NCBI RefSeq assembly: GCF_006345805.1
Contig: NC_043003.1
Location: 110,360,001 to 110,424,000 of the forward strand
Direction of reading: 5' to 3'
DNA from: Octopus sinensis
Lineage: Eukaryota
Length of the DNA stretch: 64,000 nucleotides
Shown one piece after another: positions 3,133 through 60,662 of this stretch. Position 1 is the stretch's first letter, and every line of letters starts with the position of its first letter. Position numbers and translations under genes: made by a program. The notes below the pieces were generated by a model. It was not told where the DNA came from and did no database searches. It saw only the letters and a program-made list of their open reading frames with translations.

Positions 3133-4004
3133 GTGGTCTGTTCAATAAGTATCCTGACTGTTGTCCTTGTAACAAAGCTAAAACACGCAGAGTAAAGCTG
3201 CTTGGCCTTGATTGAACTTGAAACCTTCTGTGCATGCGCTTACTTCCGCTGTTTACCGTAGTCCTCGGATGGAAAGTGTATAGCGTGTGATCGTTGCATT
3301 GAACATAACAGAGAAATTTGAGCAGAGCGTCTGCATCAAATTTTGACAAAAGCTTGGTGATACCTGTTCATAGACCCATGCAAAATTTTCAAAAGGTTTC
3401 CATCGTTCACGACATAATGAAGGGGATCTTGTGCAACTGAATCCCGAGTGTCTTTTCGGTCAGCTGAAAGCTCTTTTGGCACAAATCTGGCAGACAGTCA
3501 TCTCATACAACAAATTCAATGATAATGGACTGAACTGAACCGTAACTAATCTGCACATCCTCTTATAACTCACGGATGGGGGTTTTAACGATTTTCCCAC
3601 AAGGTTGCGCGCACATTTGCGTTGTTTTTCCTAAGCTCTGATGTTTCCGGGTCTGCCTCAAGGTTATTCAATATTGACATTTTTCTGCCATCTTGGAAAC
3701 ATCTGAATCAGTTGTTCACTTGTGTGTGGCTCATGCACTCCTCTCCATACTCTTTCTGCAACTTTGCCCTGGCATCTGCGTATGTATCGCCATGACAACT
3801 TTCTTCGATATGGTCAATGCGACGATCACATGTTACACACCTTCTTACCATACACCGCTGTAGAAAGAGAAGCGAGCTAAAACGTTAAAACTTAATTCAT
3901 TTGCACATCAGAGTCCGTGGTGAATCTGTTCCAAGTGGCTTCACTCTGTGTGCTTTAGGGTTGTTACTACGGCAACAATGCGGATAATTCTTGATCAGAC
4001 CGCG
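3132..4004. mobile_element. Mariner-derived element made of two inverted 5' ends
   Basis: TA|CGTGGTCTGTTCAATAAGTATCC at left and its related inverse GGATAATTCTTGATCAGACCGCG|TA at right. The plus strand gives TEKFEQSVCIKF..KLG. The minus strand gives KLQKEYGEECMSHTQV..ISYGSVQSII..ARFVPKELS, a mariner transposase N-terminus. Confidence 0.75.
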
Positions 4005-4014
4005 TATACATCCA

Positions 4015-4150
4015 AGAGGTTTCCGTCTACCAAATCTACTCACAAGGCTTTTATCGACCCGAGGCTATAATAGAAGATACTTTCTAAAGGTGGTATGCAG
4101 TGGGAATGGACCCGGAACCATGTGGTGTGGAAGCAATTTCTTACCCCACA
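4015..4150 (-). mobile_element. 5' fragment of tRNA-derived SINE (octopus OK-type)
   Basis: Homologous to the head of the fuller copy at 29296-29710 (TTTCCGTCTACCAAATC.ACTCACAAGGC...ACCCGGAACCATGTGG). Confidence 0.7.
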
Positions 4151-4774
4151 GGTATAGGTACATAGATGTTTTTTTATAATCTATGCGAGTAAAAGCACCA
4201 AGTGTCTATTTTAAACCATTATATTTGAGCTTACTCAGTTGATGTCTCATCGCTGCTCTAGTTTGCCGTGCTTTCTAGTTTCATCATTCGGTGGTGATTT
4301 TGTAATGATAAAATCATTCGTAAAACCCCATCCCAAGAAAAGATGTCACCAATCCATAACCATTTAAAGAGATAGCTCCGATCACATTTTACCTTTACAT
4401 AAATTATGTTAACATGTAAAAGATAGACATAATTTGAATTCGAGTAGTGAAGACTGCCAGATGCTAAAGGCATTTGGGCAAATATCCATTTCATTAGAAG
4501 CATCGAAATTAATGTAACATCTACCTTAATTTTAAATTATAATTCTAAGTACTATAAACGTATATTCTATGTGTGAAATTTGATGATCCTATCCACAGAT
4601 GTGAATATTGGTCTCCGGTGTACCAATTGTATGATTCATACATAAGCAATATAAATGGAAATAGATGTCTTCTTCGTATAGGTAGAATTATAGTCTCAAG
4701 ACACATACAGCATACTTCAATTATGAGTCAGAAGTATCTTAATCCCTACTGCGAATATCACACACACGCACACG

Positions 4775-4807
<33 letters not shown>

Positions 4808-4844
4808 GTATCAACCGATTTGTAGATAGATAAGGCAATTAAAG

Positions 4845-10051: not shown

Positions 10052-10100
<49 letters not shown>

Positions 10101-10866
10101 AATACACAAATACACACACATACACATTACTTCTTAATATATTAGATTGAGACACATCACTTATGTGTAATTTTGTATGGGTTCCTGATTTGATGTTAGG
10201 AAAGATTTGGTGAGAAATTGCAGAAATATATAAAATTCAATTTCTAGAGTGAATTACTACCCTGTACATAAGATATGCGTAGCAACAGGCATTCATATAT
10301 ATGCTCAAAAAAGAAAATAAAAACTGTTTCCTGAACATAATGGATATTCAAGAACAATATAGATATTGCTTATAGTTTAATCCGGATGACAGAGGTTTGG
10401 GAAACAGACGATATATCAGAAGCCCTCCACGAGGTACAGATATATTGTTGTTGCGGAGACATATTGAGTTCTTTTGGGATTCAGTGATAAATTGTCTTCC
10501 CTATCAACCAGCCAGAACAAGAAACTGAGCGGGGTTGTGAACACTTCAACCAAGCTACAAATATTTACTGCTACTAAATCGCGAAAACAAAGACCGATGG
10601 AATAAGTACCCAGCCTGAGAAATTATCGAGTAATATTTTACTAGTTTCATCTTGTCTCTTTGTCTTCTCTCCGTGTTGCTATATGGAAAATTAAGGAGGT
10701 TTTAGAGTCAGATAATGATTGCTATTTTCAGCATGGTGGTATCTCGTAGGTACCCTAATTTATAATTTTAATAATTACTAGCAGAGATACCCGGCGTTGC
10801 CCGGTTACATCAATTGAAGAATTATACTTTTCTGTTATATATATATGGATACACACATACGCACAC

Positions 10867-10914
<48 letters not shown>

Positions 10915-11051
10915 TATATATATATGAGTGTGTATATTAATATAAATACATGAAAGTACATAAAGTTTGTTAAAAAAAAGGGGATCATGTATATACCTCC
11001 TGGCTGTTGAGATTATAACACCTCGTTGTAAACAATGTTCCTTGTTTTTCC

Positions 11052-13255
11052 TTATGGAGCATATACAAAAAGGTTTCTTTTGGTTCCTACGCTTGAGCAG
11101 CCAACATACAGTTGCCCATGCGAGAAGCAGGGCTCTTCCAAGAGAAGACCAGCTACAGAGAGGGCTTGACCCTGAGATTTGTTAATGGACATGGCAAAGC
11201 TGACACGAAGGTGGAATTGCAGTCTTCTGAATGTAGATGGAATTTCTGCTCCTGATGGAGTAAGAGGAATTCTTGGAATAAAGACGTCATCACCTTTTCC
11301 ACATCCAGAAAGAATGATCGCCTCGACAACGTGTGACATAACTTTCTTTATCACCAGTCGTGTTCCATTGCAAAGTCTTGTTGGTTCCAGATTGCGGAGT
11401 AGCATTACAGGAGTTCCAACTTTAAGCGCAAATATGTGTGGAGGTGGCCCAGGAGGCTCCAGTGAATTGAGAGATTCAGGAGGATAGTTCACAACTTCAT
11501 TTATATCTGGAATTGTATCAACAGGCTTGTAAGTGTGTATAGTGCCGGGAAGAGAATGCATTAGCTGTTGATTAATTTTGTTAGCAGCGACGTTTTTTGG
11601 AGCTAATATTGCTCTTTCACACAGCCAATTGTGATTTTGGTAGTTTTGTGTGAAGTTGGGAAAGACTTTGTTTTTGAGGTCATCTACAGAGGAAAATGAC
11701 CACACATCCATTTGTCCTGCAGTATCGAGAGGCATCTTGCCTTCACCAAGTGCCAAAATGTCCTGTGCAAACTTTGTGGACATTTCGTCGCCGTGTAGCT
11801 GAGCTCTCATGTTAGTGGTGAGACTGAGGATTGTAACATGATGCCACAAGGTAGAGGACTTTAGGTATGCTTGGACTTCATCTGCTCTAGTGCCTTTCGG
11901 AATGACAGGAAGAGTTTGCCTGAAATCACCTAACAACAGAAGCGTTACACCTCCCATTGGAGCCTGAAAGTCTCGGATGTCTATCAGGGCTCTATCTAAT
12001 GCTTCCAAAGCTCCTTTGTGAGCCATAGTGCACTCATCCCAGACAATTAGATGACACATTTTAAGTACCTGTCCCTGATCTGAGCTTTTGTTGATGTTGC
12101 ATGAAGGCATTTCGGATGCTGCGAAATTGAGAGGGAGTTTAAAAGTTGAGTGTACTGTCCTGCAACCGGGTAACAAAGTAGCTGCAATGCCAGAGGAGGC
12201 TACAGCTACTGCAATATCCTGATGCTGCCTAACTTCTGCAAGGAGGAGCTTTGTAATAAATGTCTTTCCTGTCCCTCCAGGAGCATCGAGGAAGAAGATT
12301 CGTCTCTCGCGTTGGCGTACACTGTTAAGAATAGATCTGTAGGCCTGCAGCTGGTCCGGAAGTAATTTAGGCTAATTTTCAACAATGTTCTTTGAAAGCG
12401 CTTGAGCGTCGTAGGTTGTTTAACGAATGACAGCAGTGGGAAGGCTATTTGACCCTGACCTGAATGTCTGTGCCAGGCCATACGTCGACAATTCATTTCC
12501 ACCAAGTTTAACAAATCTGTCTTCAATGTCAATGAGTGTTTTGTTATTGATTTCATTGCTGATACCCTCCATGTCAGGATAGAGCAGTTGAGCTTGGCGC
12601 TGAAAGTCTTCAGCCAGGTAGTCTCTATATTTGAGCCATAGAGTGGCCGGATCACACAGTTCGCATGCCTGCAGTAATACTGAAAATAGTGCCCTGAGAC
12701 TTTTAGGTGATTGTGATAAAGCAGCCTCTCCTAAAGTTGCATCCCATTGTGCACCATCTTCTAACAGACCTTGTCGATAGCAGGCTTCTCTCTACGTTGT
12801 GCAGACATGTCCATGAACGGTTTTTAGGGCCTGGAAATACGTTGTCATCTGACCTCATGCAGTAGTAGACGAAGGTAGAAGCACTCTTGCTGAGTGGGAT
12901 GCACTGTGTATACTCGCCCAAGGCAAGTGTGAAACTTAATGCCAGGGTATCCATGAACATTTTGACCTGCTTTCCGTGGAGCCCAGTTTTTTCCATTCCA
13001 AGTGTAGTACGATGGAATCTGTGGATACAGCAAGGTTTGAGCGAATGGATCCACTTGACAAAGCTTGAAGTATACAGTGAGTGTGCTATCCCTTGCTTCC
13101 TCTGCCAACAGAGAAGCATTAGCATCGGTGAAGTACACTCTTTAACCATTTTCCAGGTGCATTGAAAGCTGTTGAATGGCGGGGTGTCGTTGGTAAATTG
13201 GAAAGCCAAAGATGCGCCAGAAAGCCTCGTTGCTACTTATGTACCGTCCCACGTA
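11052..13255 (-). pseudogene. Helitron RepHel C-terminal half: PIF1-family SF1 helicase
   Basis: Motifs seen: GRYISSNEAFWRIFGFPI, LGRVYTVHP..ECFYLRLLL, Walker A FFLDAPGGTGKTF, LIVWDECTM, LLGDFRQTLPV, LLRNL..LCNGTRL, FAMSINKSQGQ and HGQLYV. The frame is open from a TAG at 12372-12374 to 11052, with stops and frameshifts upstream. Motif VI reads GCSSV rather than ACSRV, and no HUH Rep motifs are seen. Confidence 0.93.
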
Positions 13256-13289
13256 TGCATATATATATATATATATATTTATGCCTGTA

Positions 13290-13420
13290 TATATGTACAA
13301 AACCCACTGAGAAGGCTTTTGCTAGACTGAGGCTACAGCAGAAGACACACACCAAGTCACCACACAGTGGGACTGAACCCAGGACCATGTGCTTGGAACG
13401 TAGTTTGTTACCACACACCC
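13290..13420 (-). mobile_element. SINE head fragment inserted in the Helitron
   Basis: CAGTGGGACTGAACCCAGGACCATGTG..TTACCACAC matches the 29.3-29.7 kb SINE head. Confidence 0.7.
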
Positions 13421-14027
13421 ACAACTGCCCATATGTATGTGTGTGTGTGTGCGTATGTGTGTATGGGTAGATATATTATGCATGTATATATGTGTATATA
13501 TATGTGTACATATTACATGTACATCTATATACATATATCTACACATAAAATACAAAATACAAAGTTATATCTTGATATCGTTAGTGATAACAATACTGAA
13601 AATATATAACAGACAGGAATTGTAGGCCCGTCTCTTGCAATTTCTATCAACTGGATCTTGTCCTCCCTCTTGTAAAGAAGTGTACGGCTGCAGCGAAATT
13701 CATTAATGGACTTTCTTCTATCGAAGGCATTTTAACAAAAATGCTTCCGTAAAGACGGTGAAAATATTGTCAATTTCCCCAAACAGGGACACAATTCAAT
13801 TTTTAAACAATAACCAAATCCCCTTCTCCGAAAGGGGGAGGGTTACGGTTTACAATTATTTAACAAATGCAACACAACAACGTTTCCCTGACGAAGAACC
13901 AACAAACGTGATTACAATAGTCAAACATTAATAATAATAACAACAAACCTTTTTAATGTATCCCCATTTATGTGAAACCACTTATTCAAGTTCAAGTCAT
14001 TGATGCAATTTTATACGAATTGCTAAT

Positions 14028-23245: not shown

Positions 23246-23560
23246 CATGCGTGGCACTGTCGGATGCGACGACGAGGTTTCCAGTTGATCCAATCTACAG
23301 AACAACCTGCTCGTGAAATTAATGTGCAAGTGGTTGAGCATTCCACAGACACGGGGAATTTAACGTGACACAGAGTGTGACAAGGCTGGCCCTTTGAAAC
23401 ACAGGTGGAAGAGAAACAGGAAGAAAGAATGACAGAAAGTTGTACGGCAAGGTTCGCCACTAGCCCCTGCTGGAGGCTCGTGGAACTTTGGGTGTATTTG
23501 CAGAATGCACACTCAAAACGACCGATCTGGGAATCGAAACCGCGATCCAATGACGATGGG
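23240..23560 (-). mobile_element. Chimeric SINE (head like 31691-31998, tail like 4845-5164)
   Basis: 23247-23400 matches the tail of the 4.9-kb SINE (GCTCGTGAAATTAA.GTGCAA..GACAAGGCTGGCCCTTTGAAA). 23420-23560 matches the AGAAAGTTG..GTTCGCCA..GGGAATCGAAACCGCGATC head. Confidence 0.7.
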
Positions 23561-23630
23561 TCCACTGCATACATATATACATACATACATACATACATAC
23601 ATACATACATACACATACATATATATATAT

Positions 23631-23695
<65 letters not shown>

Positions 23696-23697
<2 letters not shown>

Positions 23698-24886
23698 CAC
23701 AAGCCAGCCCCATACTCAACTCGTCCTGTCGAAAGACCCTTGTCCTACGTCCTGGTTTTGTTTTGTTGTTTATTTTTTATTTTTACCGTTATTGTTTTTA
23801 CGTTTTTGTATTCTTATTGGTGTCACGTATTCTGTATTTTTGTTCGTGTACTTCGTTCGTTTTCCGTCCTCGTGTTGTATACATTCGAAGCTTTCTTCCA
23901 GGGGATCTAATGCGCTTGGCTTAGATTTCCCTTGGCGGGCTGGCCATATCGGAGCAATCTCAAGATTAATCAGCCGAAATTGCTAAGATGATCTGGTTCT
24001 TGACTGATGACTGAGGGCTTCGAATGTCCCGTCCTGTGGTTCTTGTGTCGTCCTCTGTGGTGTTTCATGTTCTTGTCCATGTCTGTAATTATTTTTACTG
24101 TTTACCTATATAATCGGCGGCTACGTATCCACAATTGTCCTTATACGATAAGTATATTTTTTCTCTAGCATTGATACGACTCTTAATCTGTCTCTTTCTC
24201 TCTCTCACTCTCCTCCCTTATTCCCCTTCCTTTCTTCCCTCTCCATCCGTCTTCCCCCCCTTCTACGTTTCTCTATCTCTCTCACGTCCAGCCCCCTCGA
24301 TCTGTCTCTTTCTTCTCCTCCCTCGTCCACCTTCTCTCTCTTTTCATCTGTCCCTTTCTCCTGTCTTTTGTTCTCACGTGACCGCTAGCCGCTGTTGAGC
24401 GCTCTTTTCGTTTCAGCAGTCGCAGAAGCAACACGTATTTGTTCGTCTCCCTGCGGCCATTAGGCACAACTTCACAAGCCAGCCCCATACTCAACTCGTC
24501 CTGTCGAAAGACCCTTGTCCTACGTCCTGGTTTTGTTTTGTTGTTTATTTTTTATTTTTACCGTTATTGTTTTTACGTTTTTGTATTCTTTTTGGTGTCA
24601 CGTATTCTGTATTTTTGTTCGTGTACTTCGTTCGTTTTCCGTCCTCGTGCTGTATACATTCGAAGCTTTCTTCCAGGGGATCTAATGCGCTTGGCTTAGA
24701 TTTCCCTTGGCGGGCTGGCCATATCGGAGCAATCTCAAGATTAATCAGCCGAAATTGCTAAGATGATCTGGTTCTTGACTGATGACTGAGGGCTTCGAAT
24801 GTCCCGTCCTGTGGTTCTTGTGTCGTCTCTGTGGTGTTTCATGTTCTTGTCCATGTCTGTAATTATTTTTACTGTTTACCTATATA
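23696..24886. mobile_element. Young non-coding A-B-A element (~417-bp direct terminal repeats, ~358-bp spacer) inserted in (TA)n
   Basis: 23696-24112 and 24471-24886 differ at about 3 positions by eye (2 substitutions, 1 indel). There are no TG..CA termini and no ORF of consequence, and (TA)n lies on both flanks. Confidence 0.9.
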
Positions 24887-27969: not shown

Positions 27970-29295
27970 CTGAACACAAATAGTCAATTTAATATAAAAA
28001 GATCAATAAAGCTCTTACACTGGTTTGTAAAGAGGTATTTTGTTGCTATATCTAACCATTATTATCTATAGGAGTTTCATTTTTTAAAATTTTATTTCAA
28101 GGTACACGAAAGTAAATGAAATCATGGACGTCATTTGGAATTCATTGTCTGAACTCTACTGAACCATGTGGATCAATATATACCAGTAGTTAAAGAATTT
28201 TCTCGTTAGCTATTTTTATTTGGGGCTTTCAATTTCATATGCGGAAATCTGAATGGGGACTTTTACAGATTATTGATGGAACTAGATTAATCTCGGTGTA
28301 ACATGAAAATGAAGACATAGTTTTATATAAAATTTTAGAACAATATATAAAAAATGTAGGATATTTAAAATGATTTCCTCAGAAATACGTTGTTGACAAA
28401 ATTAGTCAATGGTAAATGAAGAAATGTAATTTAGAAAATGAACCTTTGATTTAAATCTTTTTAACTCGGTAATTAAATCCAAAGATTAATACAGAAAATG
28501 AAAGATAACAGCCAGAGGTATAATGGATTCATTATTCCACAAATAATTGCAATGACGTAACTGATAAGTTTCCAGAATGTAATCTTTTATGATTTCGCTT
28601 ATTGAATTTTGTTCTGTACTCCATTGTATGTTTCTGATATGTTTAATGCATTTCGTGCTCCTGATAAGTTGACAAAGTTATTTTCATTATAGCATTGTAT
28701 CAAGTAGTTATATAGCATAGCACTTCGTTAAATATAGATCAATGATGAAGAGCAGTAATGTACCATTTTGTTGCAAGCCCCCAAAGGCAGGTACTAATTG
28801 CAAACGCATCAAAAGGATGGATAGGAACACAAGAGAAATAAACGCTATAGCATTTTATTCTGTAACGATGACGATGAGGCTGAAAGTGTTTACGTGAATG
28901 ACATTTTTTTTTTGCTAGATACGCTTCTCGTTCAAAATAGTGTTAATCAATTAGACGAGATGGGAATATATCGCTTGGAAAAGTTTTTAAATGGAAAGCA
29001 AAAATAAATCAAGTTATACATTGAGAAATTTCCCATCAGGTTATTTTGAGACAACGTTGAAATGACACGTAAGGTAAATGAGCCGAATACTTTTTATTCC
29101 GAACCTTACTAAGGTCACTAAGCATTTAATTCGGTTATTTGTGGCGATCAGACTGTATTGGAAAAAAGTGCAAATTTCTTCCACCGTTATATTGCGAAAT
29201 TAATGAATGAAAATAGAAATCGTTAATTACATAATTAATACTATGAATAACGTAATTCATATAGTGACATTGTCAGTATTCTATATCTAGTTTAC

Positions 29296-29503
29296 TCTTT
29301 TACTTGTTTCAGTCATTTGACTGCGGTTATGCTGGAGCACCGCCTTTAATCGAGCAACTCGACCCCGGGACTTATTCTTTTGTAAGCCAAGTACTTATTC
29401 TATCGGTCTCTTTTGCCGAACCACTAAGTAACGGGGACATAAACACACCAGCATCGGTTGTCAAGCAATGCTAGGGGGAAAAACACAGGCACAAACACAC
29501 ACA

Positions 29504-37783: not shown

Positions 37784-37785
<2 letters not shown>

Positions 37786-37818
<33 letters not shown>

Positions 37819-38348
37819 ATTTGGCTCAAAAGCAAATAGCAAGGCCATGTAGGGGGACATGGAGTTAAGTACAGGGTGGTGTTCATGTAAAGAGTTCAGG
37901 CCACTTTAGGTCAAGGGAGGCTTTGAACAAAGCGGTCGTCGGCATCTTCACCATCTCGTCTGGCAGCTTGTTCCACGGATTCGCAACCCGGACGGAGAAA
38001 GCTCCTCTCCTTCGATTGAGATGAAATCGTCGCAGGTAGAGCTTTTCGGAATGACCCCGCAGCCGACGCTCTGGAGCAGGAGTGAAGAACAGCTCTTTCG
38101 AGAGGTTACACTTTCCGCTTATGATGTTGTGGGCGAGAATGAGATCACCACGGCGGCGGCGTTTTTCAAGAGAATAAAGGTCGAGCGTCCTTAGCCTTTC
38201 TTCGTAGGACAAATTTTTGAGACCATGAACCATGCGGGTTGCCAGCTTCTGGACTCTTTCGAGATGATGTATGTCTTTGAGGAGATAAGGAGAAGAGGCT
38301 TGAATCCCATACTCCAATATGGGTCTCACCAGCGTGACATAGAATGTC
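37786..38348 (-). mobile_element. 5'-truncated CR1-clade LINE, 3' end with (TAAC)n tail
   Basis: Uninterrupted TLVRPILEYG..SPY..DIHHLERVQKLATRMV.GL..LSYEERL..LDLYSLEKRRRRGDLI..RGHSEKL..FSVRVANPWNKLP, then a short 3' UTR and (GTTA)n on the plus strand. Confidence 0.93.
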
Positions 38349-42563: not shown

Positions 42564-43169
42564 TGTATATGCTGACATTCAAAATTTGGCAAGTAGAATA
42601 TAATTTTCAGCAGCTCGCAAAATATTATAATTTTCACTAACATTTATTACATAACAAACCGCCAAAGCGTTTAATATTTCAGTTACATTTTATACCTTAT
42701 GTATAAGTATATGTCTATATATATACATATATAACTATACATATTTAACTTTGTGTATATAAATTATATGGGCATATGAAGTTAAAGTGTAAAACATCTA
42801 AAAATTGAAAGAGACCTACCGATAAGTTAGCTTCATACGGGGCAAGAATGAAAAATTAGAAATGGCACCTGTTAATTAGGCATCCGGGTTAGTATAAAGC
42901 CTGGCATTCAAACACAGATTCTAAATAAGTGTAAAAAAACATATATAAAGAAAATAAAGTAAAACGAAAAATTAACGAAAAAGGTTAATAAAAAAATAAA
43001 ATTCATGAAATAAAAAATATATCAATACTTTGTTAGTGTAAAACAAAAAGAAAAGAAAAGAAAGAAACAGTGATGAAAACAAAGCAGAATATATATATAC
43101 ATATATATATATACACATTAGGAGCAAAATGACATACCGCGAAACAAAAAATTACTTTCAGTTTTATTT

Positions 43170-43213
43170 TTAGGCAAGAAGAGAGGTGGTCGCATCGAAT
43201 TCATCGTCATGCT
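43170..43213 (-). CDS. Candidate terminal exon of the host gene: (E)HDDEFDATTSLLA*
   Basis: TACTAAC at 43268-43262 and 43238-43232, with the branch A 19 nt from TTATTTCAG|. The phase-1 frame gives an acidic peptide ending in a di-leucine. AATAAA and a long U-rich tract follow on the minus strand. Confidence 0.5.
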
Positions 43214-43364
43214 CTGAAATAAGGAGCAGTTGTTAGTAAACATCTACATAATCATTCCGTTGTTAGTATAAATTCTACATAAAAAAATGGTGTGGTAATT
43301 TCTTCTCAAGACTTTGATCATAAAACAATGAATAATTTTGTTATAAAATTTGTTCGAAATGTTG

Positions 43365-47415: not shown

Positions 47416-47896
47416 CTATCACTATACGTGATAGACAATACATATACTAGCGTATTCCAACTATTGACAAACTATTTCATATGGGTTAATGTTTAATATA
47501 TTCATTAATATGTAATTAAATATTAGAATGTTTCCCATACTTATTACATAAATGCATATTTATTTCCACAGTGGTTAATAGTAATACTGGAGCTTAAAAC
47601 ATATGGAAAATAAGTGTCATTTAGATAGCATTAATGAAACAAAAGCAAATTTGAACTGTAAAATTAATTGAAATGAGACTGATTATATGTAGCGATCTGA
47701 AGAGAGTACGAATATTTGTGCAGAAAGAAAAAAACAGTTTGTTATTTGTTAGTTTAATATAACATGACACAAAAACAATGTTAATTTGTCAAGACGAAAG
47801 TAAGCATGGGCTGCTAAGAATTTGCCATATGTCTCTATATTTTAAATGCTGATTAAATATAGCTTATATCCATCTATTCATAATTATATTTTCATT

Positions 47897-50217: not shown

Positions 50218-50664
50218 GTATGTATGTATATACATTTGCGTGTGTGTATATGCACATAAACATATGCTTATACACACACTCACAAAAATGTGCATTTTTG
50301 CTTCTATCTATTAATTGCATTTTCAATTCTGTTTCCGCATTTCACATATCTTTTGAATGAAGAGTGAGATACATTTTCTAAGGAATATATTCATGTTTCA
50401 AGTATTCACAAAATAGTGTTTAAATATTATGCGAAGAAAAGAGAAACATATATAAGCAGCAAATTTTCTCAAAGATTTTTGTAAATCTCTGAGAGTTAAT
50501 AGATCTACCATACAGTTTTCATTATTTTTATTACCAATATTTTACAAATATTTATGTGGATGAATTTTGTAAATACTGCATTTATATTGTTTGAAATAAC
50601 AAATATTATATAATGAATTCTTGTCATCGATCAATTCTATAATGATAAAGAACATAAAAAGCCC

Positions 50665-50869
50665 CATGCTGTTAGTAACGCTTAATGTTAATATGGTTAT
50701 TCACAAAGTCATGCAAATGGTTATGGTTTCGAAGCCATCATGCGGTTAGTTTTGGTGAACAGTAATATATGTCTTGTCATGCTGTTAGTAGTTTGTATAG
50801 CAGTAAAGTTACATGATGTTAGTAAATCGTTAACATAATGAAAGATACAAGGCATCCATGCGTGTTAGT
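50665..50869 (-). promoter_or_regulatory. Cluster of five ACUAAC-N1-2-(G)CAUG composite motifs plus one UGCAUG
   Basis: Minus strand: ACTAACACGCATG (50869-57), ACTAACATCATG (50823-12), ACTAACAGCATG (50789-78), ACTAACCGCATG (50750-39), TGCATG (50715-10) and ACTAACAGCATG (50676-65). The spacers are unrelated to each other. Confidence 0.7.
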
Positions 50870-51365
50870 CACGGTGTGTTGGCTGCTACAATTTCCAGGT
50901 AGCCATATTGTCAAATAGGTTTCCAGGAAAATTATCTCTTATTTAATATTTAACCTACATCAAAGGAAGTCGTAATTCGAGCTTCCTAAATACAAAAGAC
51001 ATTGACAGATGGTTTTCAAATATTATCGTGTTCGTTATGCTTCAATAATTAATTCTACAAACATACTTTATGTGCGGTAATATTTCCAATGCCAGCACTT
51101 CAAATTAAATTGCTTATAGAACAGATTAAAAACGTCACTAGTTATTGCAACCCTCATATTTTGCTGTTAGATATTTTTTAAGAAAATAAATATATTATAA
51201 CTCATAAAGATATTTTCTTCAGTGTATTTCACGTAATTTTTTACTAAATTCTTATGCGCAAAATGACTAGTAGATGGCAAGTAAAATGCAGCAGCAATGT
51301 ATATTATCTATATTCATATATTATAATGTAAATGACTCTATAAACGGAATAGAATCTTTTGGAAA

Positions 51366-51391
51366 TTAATAAATGTCTCGTTGTATAACTA
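51366..51391 (-). CDS. Candidate alternative terminal exon: (V)VIQRDIY*
   Basis: Very strong acceptor TGTGTTTTTTTTTCTTTTTTTCATCTCAG|TAG (NAGNAG). The phase-1 frame is compatible with the 57456 donor. The peptide is too short to be evidence by itself. Confidence 0.35.
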
Positions 51392-51689
51392 CTGAGATGA
51401 AAAAAAGAAAAAAAAACACAGGTAATGTTATTTACAGTCAAATATGCAGGTCAGTTTTCAATGTGTGTCACATCAGAGGACGAGGGATTTTATCATGAGA
51501 TATGAGCTAATATTCTATTGCAGACTAGAAGGAAAGGGTAATCATAGTAAATGTTCAGAAAAGAAATGATGCAGCAGTAAATGTTTTAACATATTGTGCA
51601 AGGAAACCAGTGCTTTGTTATTCGTCAACTGTCAAGAATAATAATCCAATATTACAGAGGTACATATAATGTAACTGAATATATGTGTG

Positions 51690-57358: not shown

Positions 57359-57455
57359 CTGAAATATAATAATTTAGAAACGTGTGTTAATATACAAAAT
57401 CAATATCTGCATAGCACTCGAGTAATTCTCAATTGCCATGGAGTTGTTATCAAAC

Positions 57456-57622
57456 CTGGCATGTCACCACTGATAATGCTTCTTTCTTCTTCTTCTTTAT
57501 TTTGGTCTATTGCCAAGGAGTCCGTTGATTCATCGTCGGCCACAGGGCCATCTAAGAAAGTTATGTGGGCATATTTGTGGACTAGAGGATGCTCCTCCTC
57601 TGCTGGCTGAATAATAGGAACT
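57456..57622 (-). CDS. Internal coding exon of an unidentified host gene
   Basis: Strong acceptor ACTTTTATTTCTCTCCAG|, 167 nt, phase 2 to phase 1. It reads VPIIQPAEEEHPLVHKYAHITFLDGPVADDESTDSLAIDQNKEEEERSIISGDMP, with donor AG|GTTTGA (weak; read-through would give GLITTPWQLRITRVLCRY*). Confidence 0.65.
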
Positions 57623-58939
57623 CTGGAGAGAAATAAAAGTTTATATGAATTAATATACGTTTAAGTTTTTAAAAAAATGTTCGAATGGCTTGTGCATATA
57701 AAGGACAATAAATAATATATAAGAACTTTTATAAATATTTAATGTGAATAATGGTAAAAATATACGGACAGAAAATATTATTTCGCAGCAGTATATATGC
57801 ACCAAGAGAAAGAGTGAAGTGACTAAACCTGTCCATGAAGACTCCACAGAAAGACAAAAATAATATAGTACAGTTTAGCAATTATTATGAAGCATAGTAA
57901 AAGTAAGCATAATCTCAAAGAACAGAAATTAAAACTACCAAAATGTTTACGAAAACGAAGCAGAGGGAATAGCACAAAATTGATAGGGATCTCCTGTATA
58001 GCTTCTGAAAGATTTTAGGTCAACTAATGAATGAGAATGGAGGAAAAGATTGTTAGAACCGTTTCATTATCACCTACATTTGAGCGAGATGATATGACAG
58101 CGTTCAACCAAATAAATGAAAATGTTGAGCTTTCCTTAAACGAGCGAATGATTAAGAATCTAAAGATATTTAAAAACAAAACAATAGAAGTGCCAAAAGT
58201 AATTCCACTCGAAAACATGACAACTGATATGGACACCACTGTCAAGTTGTTAATGCCATAGTAAATCGGGGAGGCGTGCAAAATCCACACAGAACAAAAC
58301 AATGGCTTTCTAGCGAGAAAGCCAAAGAGAAGACATCATAAGCAGTACTTCGATACTTAGAGTGAGATCACATTTTTAATGTAGCCATTGAAAATAAATT
58401 ACTGAAAAACTGAAAACGCTCGTTAATAGCGGAACAACGAGGGATTTAGAGTAGGTAAGTTTGTATCAACCTCAAGCAGGCGTTTGAAATTCTGGCATAC
58501 GCCATTCTGTTTCCTTCACAGAGGGGGAACGCTTCTCACAAATTTCACTTCGCTCCATAATCTTGCATCACAAATATGTACAAAATGTGTGCAAAATGAG
58601 CGAAATGATATTCAATAGAAAATATTGGATATATTTTAAGTACGCTGACGTCTCTTGGCTGTGGTGCGTCAAAGTTTGAAAGCCTGAAGAAATGGTACGA
58701 TGAGTAAATGATCATTTACTTGAGAATCTCTACTATTCATATAGCATTTACCTATTATTCCAGAATCTCACAGACATAGAGAAAATAGCGGACATACTAA
58801 CATATATAGCTGTGAAAAGTGAATTTAGAGTGATGTTGGAATGGCAAGGATAATGAATATTCAAAGCCATGGACCTGGTTTTGTCAATCTTAAGAGAGCT
58901 ATGCTGAATAAACTGTAATGTTCCACCCAATTAACATAC

Positions 58940-60515: not shown

Positions 60516-60662
60516 TCGGCTTGCTCTGTAGAGCTTTGTAAGCTGTGCTTCGACGTGGATTCTGATTTTGTACAATATACTGTCGCATAGGTATCATCAT
60601 AGTGTTCATTTTGGACGAATTCTTCTCTCATTGGCGTCAATTTATTAAAAGTAGGTTTCTTA
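60516..60662 (-). CDS. Internal 147-nt phase-2 coding exon
   Basis: TTATATTTTCAG| ... GA|GTAAGT, with only one frame open: KKPTFNKLTPMREEFVQNEHYDDTYATVYCTKSESTSKHSLQSSTEQA. Confidence 0.7.

What the first reader, a model, noticed from the sequence alone, without database searches (positions are those of the whole stretch)
50665..50869. Five-fold ACUAAC + GCAUG composite motif cluster on the host-gene sense strand
Seen: five ACTAAC hexamers lie within ~205 nt, each followed 1-2 nt later by (G)CATG, plus a free TGCATG. The spacers share no similarity, so this is not a tandem duplication; a rough base-composition estimate gives well under one ACTAAC expected in this span. Established: ACUAAY is the STAR-family (QKI/How/GLD-1/ASD-2) element and (U)GCAUG is the RBFOX element. 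Inference: this is a selected cooperative STAR+RBFOX module with fixed spacing, about 500 nt downstream of the candidate 51391 last exon. It could control last-exon choice or act as a 3' UTR localisation or translation element. I do not know a described fixed-spacing composite of this kind in cephalopods.
Basis: partly seen in the sequence, partly recalled or inferred. Interest (0 to 1): 0.78.

Follow-up and report, generated by a model that had tools for sequence, protein, structure and literature searches.

The report
Splicing-motif cluster in octopus receptor intron
Five copies of a 12-letter signal that joins two well-known splicing-protein binding sites lie, far beyond chance, on the transcribed strand of an intron of an octopus GABA-B receptor gene, upstream of where that gene chooses between alternative endings; whether they act there is unproven.

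Summary
On the minus strand, 50665-50869 holds five ACTAAC-N(1-2)-(G)CATG composites plus one free TGCATG. About 0.2 composites are expected per 64 kb. The spacers are no more alike than shuffled sequence, so only the 12-mer is kept.

It is Octopus sinensis LOC115214515, GABA-B receptor subunit 2-like, on the minus strand. Two of its exons (60662-60516 and 57622-57456) match at 100%. The annotated short isoforms X3 and X4 end in two terminal exons at 43213 and 42920. The cluster is therefore sense-strand and intronic, 6.6 kb after exon B and 7.4 kb before those terminal exons.

The last copy, UACUAAC-A-GCAUG, is followed by a pyrimidine tract, an AG, a short ORF, a stop and AAUAAA. This resembles an unannotated terminal exon.

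My best reading (about 0.4) is branch-point/STAR sites, each abutted by an RBFOX core, that gate a proximal 3' splice site. No binding, transcript or close-species conservation data could be obtained. The cuttlefish orthologous intron lacks the cluster. A transposon-derived or DNA-level origin remains open.

The parts
50857..50869 (-). Composite copy 5 (first in the transcript): gACUAAC-AC-GCAUG, with a 2-nt linker
50812..50824 (-). Composite copy 4: UACUAAC-A-UCAUG. The GCAUG core is lost and CAUG is kept. A UAAC half-site lies 7 nt upstream.
50778..50790 (-). Composite copy 3: UACUAAC-A-GCAUG
50739..50750 (-). Composite copy 2: aACUAAC-C-GCAUG
50710..50715 (-). Free canonical UGCAUG, preceded by cAUAACcauu. 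This may be a decayed sixth copy.
50665..50677 (-). Composite copy 1 (last in the transcript): UACUAAC-A-GCAUG. The branch A at 50672 lies 35 nt upstream of the AG at 50638-50637.
50637..50661 (-). Pyrimidine tract cuuuuuauguucuuuaucauuauAG. This is a candidate, unannotated 3' splice site (inference).
   Evidence: pyrimidine fraction 0.75, against 0.73 for the annotated X3 acceptor
50527..50636 (-). Candidate unannotated terminal exon. In the phase left by exon B it reads E-LIDDKNSLYNICYFKQYKCSIYKIHPHKYL-stop (stop 50544-50542), then AAUAAA at 50532-50527 (inference; no transcript evidence).
57456..57622 (-). Exon B of the GABA-B receptor subunit 2-like gene (X2 residues 690-745 plus the first base of the next codon). 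The 5' splice site GT is at 57455-57454.
60516..60662 (-). Exon A of the same gene (X2 residues about 641-689). The 5' splice site is GTAAGT.
43170..43213 (-). Annotated alternative terminal exon of isoform X3 (E-HDDEFDATTSLLA-stop). GCAUG is at 43212-43208 and AAUAAA at 43168-43163.
43232..43268 (-). Two perfect UACUAAC heptamers (43268-43262 and 43238-43232), 49 and 19 nt upstream of the X3 acceptor AG (43215-43214)
42889..42920 (-). Annotated alternative terminal coding exon of isoform X4 (E-SVFECQALY-stop)

Best explanation
The cluster is a cis-element array in the pre-mRNA of an octopus GABA-B receptor subunit 2-like gene. It lies in the intron after the last shared coding exon in the window (exon B). 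In that intron the transcript is spliced either to short proximal terminal exons (X3, X4) or to a distant exon that encodes a tail of about 394 residues.

Each unit is a branch-point-type (U)ACUAAC. This is the site of SF1/BBP and of STAR proteins of the QKI/How/ASD-2 type. One or two nucleotides later comes a (G)CAUG, the RBFOX core.

The two footprints are contiguous. I therefore infer that the proteins compete rather than co-bind. In cells that express RBFOX (or a QKI-like protein), the UACUAAC sites would be hidden from SF1/U2. In other cells they would be free to act as strong branch points.

The most concrete target is the splice-acceptor-like site directly downstream of the last copy. 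That site has a pyrimidine tract, AG at 50638-50637, a 31-codon in-phase ORF, a stop and AAUAAA. It looks like a proximal terminal exon whose use would truncate the receptor's C-terminal tail. A distal effect on the annotated X3/X4 terminal exons, 7.4 kb away, is the alternative target.

Shown: the motifs, their non-random clustering, the sense strand, the intronic position and the alternative terminal exons. Inferred: every binding event, the competition and the candidate exon.
For: 1. Non-random clustering. Five composites occur where 0.23 are expected in the whole window, and 0 of 300 simulations had two within 205 nt.

2. Only the 12-mer is kept. Spacers and flanks are at shuffle level, there is no TRF array, and there is no second copy of 50290-51650 in the window. 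This points to constraint on the motif rather than recent duplication.

3. Variation sits in the linker, in both identity and length (1 or 2 nt). That fits two short sites on a flexible strand better than one rigid 12-bp site.

4. All copies are in one orientation, on the sense strand of a gene shown by two exons with 100% protein identity.

5. The gene has annotated alternative terminal exons in this very intron.

6. The annotated X3 acceptor uses the same vocabulary: two UACUAAC at -19 and -49, and GCAUG at exon positions 2-6. The acceptors of constitutive exons A and B have no ACUAAC.

7. Among 18 sense-strand ACTAAC sites outside the (TAGT)n microsatellite, the geometry 'branch site, pyrimidine fraction at least 0.7, AG within 15-40 nt' occurs only at the annotated X3 acceptor and at cluster copy 1. 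AG is depleted across the cluster, 4 against 9.9 expected.

8. The sense RNA is not more structured than shuffles (z = +1.05), so the sites would be single-stranded.

9. Precedents exist. [quoted passage not shown] QKI competes with SF1 at tandem ACUAAC branch sites of RAI14 exon 11 (PMC13004596). ASD-2 and SUP-12 bind juxtaposed CUAAC repeats and UGUGUG to switch between two sets of 3' exons in unc-60 (PMC3469465).
Against: - There are no transcript, CLIP or lariat data, and the candidate exon at 50636 matches none of the retrieved isoforms.
- The annotated terminal exons are 7.4 kb away.
- None of the five composites has the U of UGCAUG, and copy 4 lacks the G.
- UAAY half-sites lie within 20 nt of only 2 of 5 cores, where about 0.7 per core are expected by chance, so nothing supports dimeric STAR binding.
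- The Sepia pharaonis orthologous locus has no composite and only two sense ACTAAC in 26.6 kb after exon B. That intron is not alignable at all, so this is weak evidence.
- Short motifs match many things. On the opposite strand GUUAGU fits the Musashi consensus (from memory), and TAACNG fits a Myb-type DNA site in 3 of 5 copies.
- Acceptor-like sites and AATAAA are common in 25-30% GC DNA.
Confidence: 0.4

Rival explanations
1. The array is transposon-derived or otherwise non-functional for the host. It would be a set of protein-binding motifs, such as subterminal transposase or accessory-protein sites of a non-autonomous DNA element, or another repeat-internal motif array. The motif was selected in the life of the element, not of the host gene, and the element happened to insert in this intron in this orientation.
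For: - The window is dense with mobile-element remains and microsatellites, including a Helitron PIF1 helicase and nearly 200 TRF rows.
- Clusters of identical 10-12-bp motifs in one orientation with unrelated spacers are typical of transposon subterminal regions (established knowledge: En/Spm, Ac, P, piggyBac).
- Five near-identical 12-mers are tighter than most host regulatory clusters.
- The cluster is absent from cuttlefish.
Against: - There is no convincing terminal inverted repeat or target duplication around it. The best pair is 30 nt at 70% in AT-rich DNA.
- There is no inverted partner cluster and no second copy in 64 kb, so it is not a very abundant family.
- The variable linker length is unusual for a single DNA-binding site.
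Confidence: 0.3
2. The array is a DNA-level homotypic cluster of binding sites for a sequence-specific factor, forming an intronic enhancer or silencer of the GABA-B receptor gene. The factor could be a bipartite or multi-zinc-finger protein, or a Myb-type protein reading TAACNG. The RNA motif matches would then be coincidental.
For: - The conserved unit is a 12-mer with a free central position, as for bipartite DNA binders.
- Three of five copies fit YAACNG on the minus strand (reading; the consensus is from memory).
- The local G+C is slightly raised (0.34 against 0.21-0.28).
- Octopus has a very large C2H2 zinc-finger repertoire (established knowledge).
Against: - No known factor could be assigned.
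- A strict single orientation is not required for DNA sites (about 1/16 by chance).
- The linker length varies between 1 and 2 bp.
- The same 12-mer elsewhere showed no sign of being a general DNA element.
Confidence: 0.15
3. One reading: the cluster lies in the 3' UTR of an unannotated terminal exon that starts at 51391. That site has a strong U-run acceptor; in phase it reads VVIQRDIY-stop. The cluster would act on localisation, stability or translation, and the AAUAAA at 50532-50527 would serve as the poly(A) signal.
For: - The acceptor at 51392/51391 has an excellent pyrimidine tract.
- No AATAAA occurs in the first 250 nt or so after it, and the next good one is downstream of the cluster.
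- STAR and RBFOX proteins also act on 3' UTRs (established knowledge).
Against: - No retrieved isoform ends in the predicted peptide.
- There are no transcript data.
- The acceptor at 50638, with its own UACUAAC, would lie inside that UTR.
Confidence: 0.1
4. The cluster is a chance co-occurrence of short motifs in AT-rich DNA.
For: Neither ACTAAC nor GCATG is enriched in the window overall.
Against: Five composites against 0.23 expected per 64 kb, and no simulation with even two within 205 nt.
Confidence: 0.005

Closest known systems
RBFOX silencer at -34 of calcitonin/CGRP (CALCA) exon 4 (Zhou and Lou, as summarised in PMC2777236)
   Same: A (U)GCAUG lies next to the branch point in the intron upstream of an alternative terminal exon of a neuronally regulated gene. 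Bound RBFOX prevents SF1 from binding the branch point, so neurons skip the proximal terminal exon.
   Different: In CALCA there is one element with a full UGCAUG, at a mapped exon and with biochemical proof. Here there are five copies with a fixed 1-2-nt distance to a consensus UACUAAC and no 5' U. The nearest acceptor is unannotated and nothing has been tested.
Tandem ACUAAC branch sites of RAI14 exon 11, where QKI competes with SF1 (PMC13004596)
   Same: Repeated perfect ACUAAC elements lie in the intron upstream of a regulated acceptor. Either element can serve as the branch point, and a STAR protein can occupy them to repress the acceptor. The annotated X3 acceptor in this window has exactly such a pair, at -19 and -49.
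   Different: RAI14 has two elements 9 nt apart within 45 nt of the acceptor, which fits a QKI dimer. Here the five elements are 34-74 nt apart, spread over 205 nt, and each carries an added GCAUG.
C. elegans juxtaposed composite elements: CUAAC repeats + UGUGUG in unc-60 intron 1A (ASD-2 + SUP-12; PMC3469465) and UGCAUG + GUGUG in egl-15 (FOX-1/ASD-1 + SUP-12; PMC2777236)
   Same: A STAR-protein site or an RBFOX site abuts the site of a second RNA-binding protein, and the two act as one unit near a branch site. In unc-60 the outcome is a switch between two alternative sets of 3' exons.
   Different: The partner there is SUP-12, and binding is cooperative. A STAR-plus-RBFOX composite with fixed spacing, repeated five times, is not among the cases I found. 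Here I infer competition, not cooperation.
Bipartite Quaking response element, ACUAAY-N(1-20)-UAAY
   Same: The core ACUAAC is present in all five copies on the sense strand.
   Different: The half-site is not enriched, and the conserved partner is GCAUG at a fixed distance rather than UAAY at a variable one.

Membership tests
RBFOX-dependent intronic splicing element | (U)GCAUG on the transcribed strand | tested here: met
   GCAUG is present in 4 of 5 composites, plus one free UGCAUG, on the minus strand. The minus strand is sense for the host gene. The 5' U is absent from all five composites.
RBFOX-dependent intronic splicing element | Position within a few hundred nt of a regulated exon | tested here: inconclusive
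   The cluster is 7.4 kb from the annotated X3/X4 terminal exons and 6.6 kb from exon B. It is adjacent only to an unannotated acceptor-like site at 50638.
RBFOX-dependent intronic splicing element | Motif conservation in orthologous introns | tested here: not met
   No composite and no GCATG excess in 26.6 kb after exon B in the Sepia pharaonis locus L059. That intron is not alignable. Closer species could not be reached.
RBFOX-dependent intronic splicing element | Binding by RBFOX and an effect on splicing | not testable with these tools
   Needs EMSA or CLIP and a minigene.
STAR/Quaking response element | Core ACUAAY on the transcript | tested here: met
   Five of five copies.
STAR/Quaking response element | [quoted passage not shown] | tested here: inconclusive
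   Read: a half-site lies within 20 nt of 2 of 5 cores, where about 0.7 per core are expected by chance.
SF1/BBP branch-point sequence | UACUAAC-type sequence | tested here: met
   The full heptamer is present in copies 1, 3 and 4.
SF1/BBP branch-point sequence | 18-40 nt upstream of an acceptor with a pyrimidine tract | tested here: inconclusive
   Met by copy 1 only (35 nt, pyrimidine fraction 0.75), and that acceptor is unannotated.
SF1/BBP branch-point sequence | Use as a branch point (lariat) | not testable with these tools
   Needs lariat sequencing.
Tandem repeat / minisatellite | Whole units alike, with regular period | tested here: not met
   Spacings are 74, 39, 34 and 45-46 nt. Spacers are at shuffle level. 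There is no TRF row for the region.
DNA-transposon subterminal repeat array | Terminal inverted repeats, a target-site duplication and a partner array in inverse orientation | tested here: not met
   Only a 30-nt, 70% inverted pair in AT-rich DNA. No inverse-orientation composite in the window.
DNA-transposon subterminal repeat array | Many copies in the genome | not testable with these tools
   No octopus genome is searchable by DNA here. There is a single copy in the 64-kb window.

The most novel reading that the evidence does not exclude
This is a dedicated composite RNA switch: a consensus branch-point/STAR site fused at fixed distance to an RBFOX core, repeated five times. It lets neuronal RBFOX, or a QKI-like protein, mask a battery of strong branch points. 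That decides whether a cephalopod GABA-B receptor subunit gets a truncated or a long C-terminal tail. It would be a lineage-specific solution, because cuttlefish lack it.
Probability: 0.2. Interest if true: 0.65.

Novelty: new variant of a known kind. Interest (0 to 1): 0.45.

Why it matters
The C-terminal tail of GABA-B receptor subunit 2 carries the coiled coil and the trafficking and signalling determinants. Choosing between a short and a long tail would therefore change receptor behaviour in neurons.

Cephalopod nervous systems are a major case of independent evolution of complexity, and little is known about how their very long neural genes (here 0.7-1.1 Mb) control 3'-end choice.

A fixed-spacing branch-point + RBFOX composite would be a compact, directly testable example of competition between a tissue-specific RNA-binding protein and the core splicing factor SF1. 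It would extend mechanisms known from single sites in CALCA and RAI14.

If the array turns out to be transposon-borne, it would instead illustrate how a mobile element can deliver ready-made splicing signals into an intron.

Tried and rejected
1. **A universal minisatellite core.** A metagenome scan for two copies of CATGCNGTTAGT 20-50 nt apart returned 45 loci, nearly all tandem repeats, in 27 independent groups. I took this for a shared core, perhaps Myb-type. I rejected the idea for two reasons. There is no conservation outside the 11 fixed bases across groups. Three composition-matched control 12-mers gave 7, 3 and 1 hits in viral contigs, against 2 for the real motif. My per-position conservation analysis of those arrays was flawed: spurious copies passed the threshold and the unit edges were biased. 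I do not use it.

2. **A structured RNA.** Folds of both strands are no better than shuffles. There are no Rfam or tRNA hits in the window.

3. **A coding or called ORF over the cluster.** The two ORFs are not on record.

4. **A repeat within the window, or a MITE.** There is no second copy and no credible inverted repeats.

5. **A microRNA site array or hairpin cluster.** The spacing of 34-74 nt is too short for hairpins, and the variable central base does not fit a seed. This was judged by reading only.

6. **Reaching close orthologues.**
   - The word search with the exon B ORF found nothing.
   - The full HMMER search found the gene.
   - The octopus genes span 0.71 and 1.13 Mb, so no DNA is served.
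   - O. bimaculoides proteins have no contigs in the collection.
   - The last protein search returned only the Sepia fragment.

7. **Literature search for the 12-mer itself.** It found only primers.

Full report
**The observation**

Window 50665-50869 carries five copies of CATG[C/A]-N(1-2)-GTTAGT on the + strand, at 50665, 50739, 50778, 50812 and 50857. On the minus strand these read (U)ACUAAC-N(1-2)-(G)CAUG.
- Copy 4 has UCAUG.
- Copy 5 has a 2-nt linker.
- A free UGCAUG lies at 50715-50710, preceded by cAUAAC. It may be a decayed sixth unit.

ACTAAC and GCATG are at expected frequency in the window overall. The composite occurs nowhere else on either strand. First-order Markov simulations give 0.23 composites per 64 kb; the window has five, and none of 300 simulations placed two within 205 nt. 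A motif-blind scan for any 6-mer with at least five same-strand copies in 210 nt returns only microsatellite-type words, one A-rich word, and ACTAAC/GTTAGT here.

The spacers (62, 27, 22 and 33 nt) and the flanks are no more alike than shuffles (p = 0.24-0.5). TRF reports no array.

**Where it lies**

The window is AT-rich (33% G+C) and full of microsatellites and mobile-element remains. An open frame at 57403-57660 on the minus strand, flanked by a pyrimidine tract plus AG and by a GT, looked like an exon. The word-based protein search found nothing for it. A full HMMER search hit a 1140-residue protein at 95% identity over exactly the exon-like part.

That protein is XP_036361026.1, Octopus sinensis LOC115214515. 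Its sister isoforms are named gamma-aminobutyric acid type B receptor subunit 2-like, and the O. vulgaris orthologue is in the same cluster. tblastn places two exons in the window at 100% identity:
- Exon A is at 60662-60516, with 5' splice site GTAAGT.
- Exon B is at 57622-57456, with its 5' splice site at 57455-57454 and one extra base carried into the next codon.

The isoforms diverge right after exon B:
- X1 and X2 continue with a 394-residue tail that is not encoded in the window.
- X3 ends ...GDMP-EHDDEFDATTSLLA.
- X4 ends ...GDMP-ESVFECQALY.

Both short endings are encoded on the minus strand of the window:
- The X3 exon starts at 43213. Its acceptor AG is at 43215-43214, its stop at 43172-43170, and AAUAAA at 43168-43163.
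- The X4 exon starts at 42920, with its stop at 42891-42889.

The cluster is therefore on the sense strand and intronic for every retrieved isoform. It lies 6.6 kb downstream of the exon B donor and 7.4 kb upstream of the annotated alternative terminal exons.

**Local anatomy on the sense strand**

Reading, the last unit is UACUAAC-A-GCAUG at 50677-50665. It is followed by gggcuuuuuauguucuuuaucauuauAG, with the AG at 50638-50637. The branch adenosine would lie 35 nt from that AG, and the pyrimidine fraction is 0.75.

In the phase left by exon B, the sequence after the AG reads E-LIDDKNSLYNICYFKQYKCSIYKIHPHKYL-stop (stop at 50544-50542). AAUAAA follows at 50532-50527, and a GU-rich stretch follows that. 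Both annotated short endings also begin with Glu formed by the carried-over G plus AA or AG.

I surveyed the 18 sense-strand ACTAAC sites outside the (TAGT)n microsatellite. The geometry 'branch site, pyrimidine tract of at least 0.7, AG within 15-40 nt' occurs only at the annotated X3 acceptor and at this copy. AG is scarce across the cluster, 4 against 9.9 expected.

The annotated X3 acceptor has two perfect UACUAAC, 19 and 49 nt upstream of its AG, and GCAUG at exon positions 2-6. The acceptors of constitutive exons A and B have no ACUAAC. This suggests that the UACUAAC/GCAUG vocabulary goes with the alternative terminal exons of this gene. The sample is very small.

Neither strand folds better than shuffles (z = +1.05 for the sense strand and +0.48 for the antisense strand).

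**How it most likely works**

SF1/BBP and the QKI/How/ASD-2 group of STAR proteins recognise (U)ACUAAC, and RBFOX recognises (U)GCAUG (PMC13004596, PMC2777236). With a linker of one or two nucleotides, the seven-nucleotide footprints of a KH-QUA2 domain and of the RBFOX RRM are contiguous. I infer that binding is mutually exclusive.

Known cases show the logic:
- RBFOX at the -34 UGCAUG of calcitonin/CGRP exon 4, itself an alternative terminal exon, stops SF1 from binding the branch point, so neurons skip that exon (PMC2777236).
- QKI competes with SF1 at the tandem ACUAAC branch sites of RAI14 exon 11 (PMC13004596).
- ASD-2 and SUP-12 on juxtaposed CUAAC repeats and UGUGUG switch unc-60 between two sets of 3' exons (PMC3469465).

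My best reading, at a confidence of about 0.4, is that the array is a battery of strong branch points, each guarded by an RBFOX core. It would gate the acceptor at 50638, or more distally the X3/X4 exons, and so influence whether the receptor subunit gets a short or a long tail. Every binding step and the candidate exon are inferences.

**What weakens it**

- No GCAUG in a composite has the 5' U, and copy 4 has lost the G.
- UAAY half-sites are at chance level.
- The candidate exon is unannotated, and acceptor-like sites and AATAAA are frequent in such AT-rich DNA.
- The only orthologous locus I could fetch is Sepia pharaonis L059, with exon A at about 10067-10225, exon B at about 12541-12716 and the next model exon at 29158-29298. 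It has no composite and only two sense ACTAAC in 26.6 kb after exon B. The octopus and cuttlefish introns share nothing but microsatellites, so this excludes only deep conservation.
O. bimaculoides is not held as contigs. The last protein search returned only the Sepia fragment.
I can say only that the segment is single-copy in 64 kb and has no credible inverted termini.

**Rivals**

- A transposon-borne or otherwise host-neutral motif array (0.3) fits the repeat-rich setting and the tightness of the 12-mers.
- A DNA-level site cluster, acting as an intronic enhancer (0.15), cannot be excluded. Three of five copies fit a Myb-type TAACNG on the minus strand.
- Chance is excluded.

**A lead that failed**

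A metagenome scan for two copies of the 12-mer gave 45 loci, almost all tandem repeats with unrelated units. This looked like a shared core. There is no conservation outside the fixed bases, and control 12-mers give similar counts in the viral collection. Any 12-mer therefore turns up in some tandem repeat in collections of this size. The lead says nothing about the octopus cluster.

**Verdict**

The kind of element is known. The fixed-spacing five-fold composite is a new variant if it is real. Interest is 0.45.

Noticed in passing
window 43208-43268, minus strand: The annotated X3 terminal exon has two perfect UACUAAC, 19 and 49 nt upstream of its acceptor, and GCAUG at exon positions 2-6. 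This dual-branch-site layout resembles the QKI-repressed RAI14 exon 11. AAUAAA follows the stop codon after 1 nt.
   Followed up: partly
window 11055-12371, minus strand (and 12209-13236): A Helitron-type PIF1 helicase open frame of 439 codons (Pfam E = 1e-61). The best named relatives are Octopus bimaculoides helicases at 75-81% identity.
   Followed up: partly
window 47698-47753, minus strand: AACUAAC is followed by a pyrimidine-rich stretch and cucuucAG 52 nt later. This is another acceptor-like site in the same intron.
   Followed up: no
In the phase left by exon B it would read VVIQRDIY-stop. None of the retrieved isoforms uses it.
   Followed up: partly
window 23761-23849 and 24536-24624: TRF returns near-identical rows 775 nt apart, and long open frames at 23381-23983 and 24399-24758 share sequence. 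This is a duplicated segment of about 775 bp.
   Followed up: no
window 37785-37818: The (TAGT)8.5 microsatellite accounts for 7 of the 25 minus-strand ACTAAC hits, so raw strand counts of ACTAAC are inflated.
   Followed up: yes
window 37886-38347, minus strand: A 154-codon open frame looks like the C-terminal part of a LINE reverse-transcriptase ORF. It has no Pfam hit.
   Followed up: no
window 28306-28501: Five AAAATGA words lie within 195 nt on the + strand. This is A-rich low-complexity sequence and is not comparable to the 12-mer cluster.
   Followed up: partly
L039 (WLWD01004040.1) 10573-13823 and 3264-4841: An animal contig from a metagenome carries a 3.2-kb satellite of 57-nt units that happen to contain CATGCAGTTAGT. 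Next to it is a 525-residue ORF that by eye begins with a THAP-like zinc-finger motif and resembles Harbinger-type transposases (not searched).
   Followed up: partly
L059 29158-29298 (Sepia pharaonis CAHIKZ030000138.1): The cuttlefish gene model CAE1155047.1 is a 180-residue fragment: exon A, exon B and a third exon 16.4 kb downstream. The peptide of that third exon does not resemble the octopus X3/X4 endings.
   Followed up: partly
window 50665-50869, plus strand: On the antisense strand the same hexamer reads GUUAGU. This fits the Musashi (G/A)U1-3AGU consensus and resembles a weak 5' splice site (both from memory). Short-motif matches are easy to obtain on either strand.
   Followed up: no
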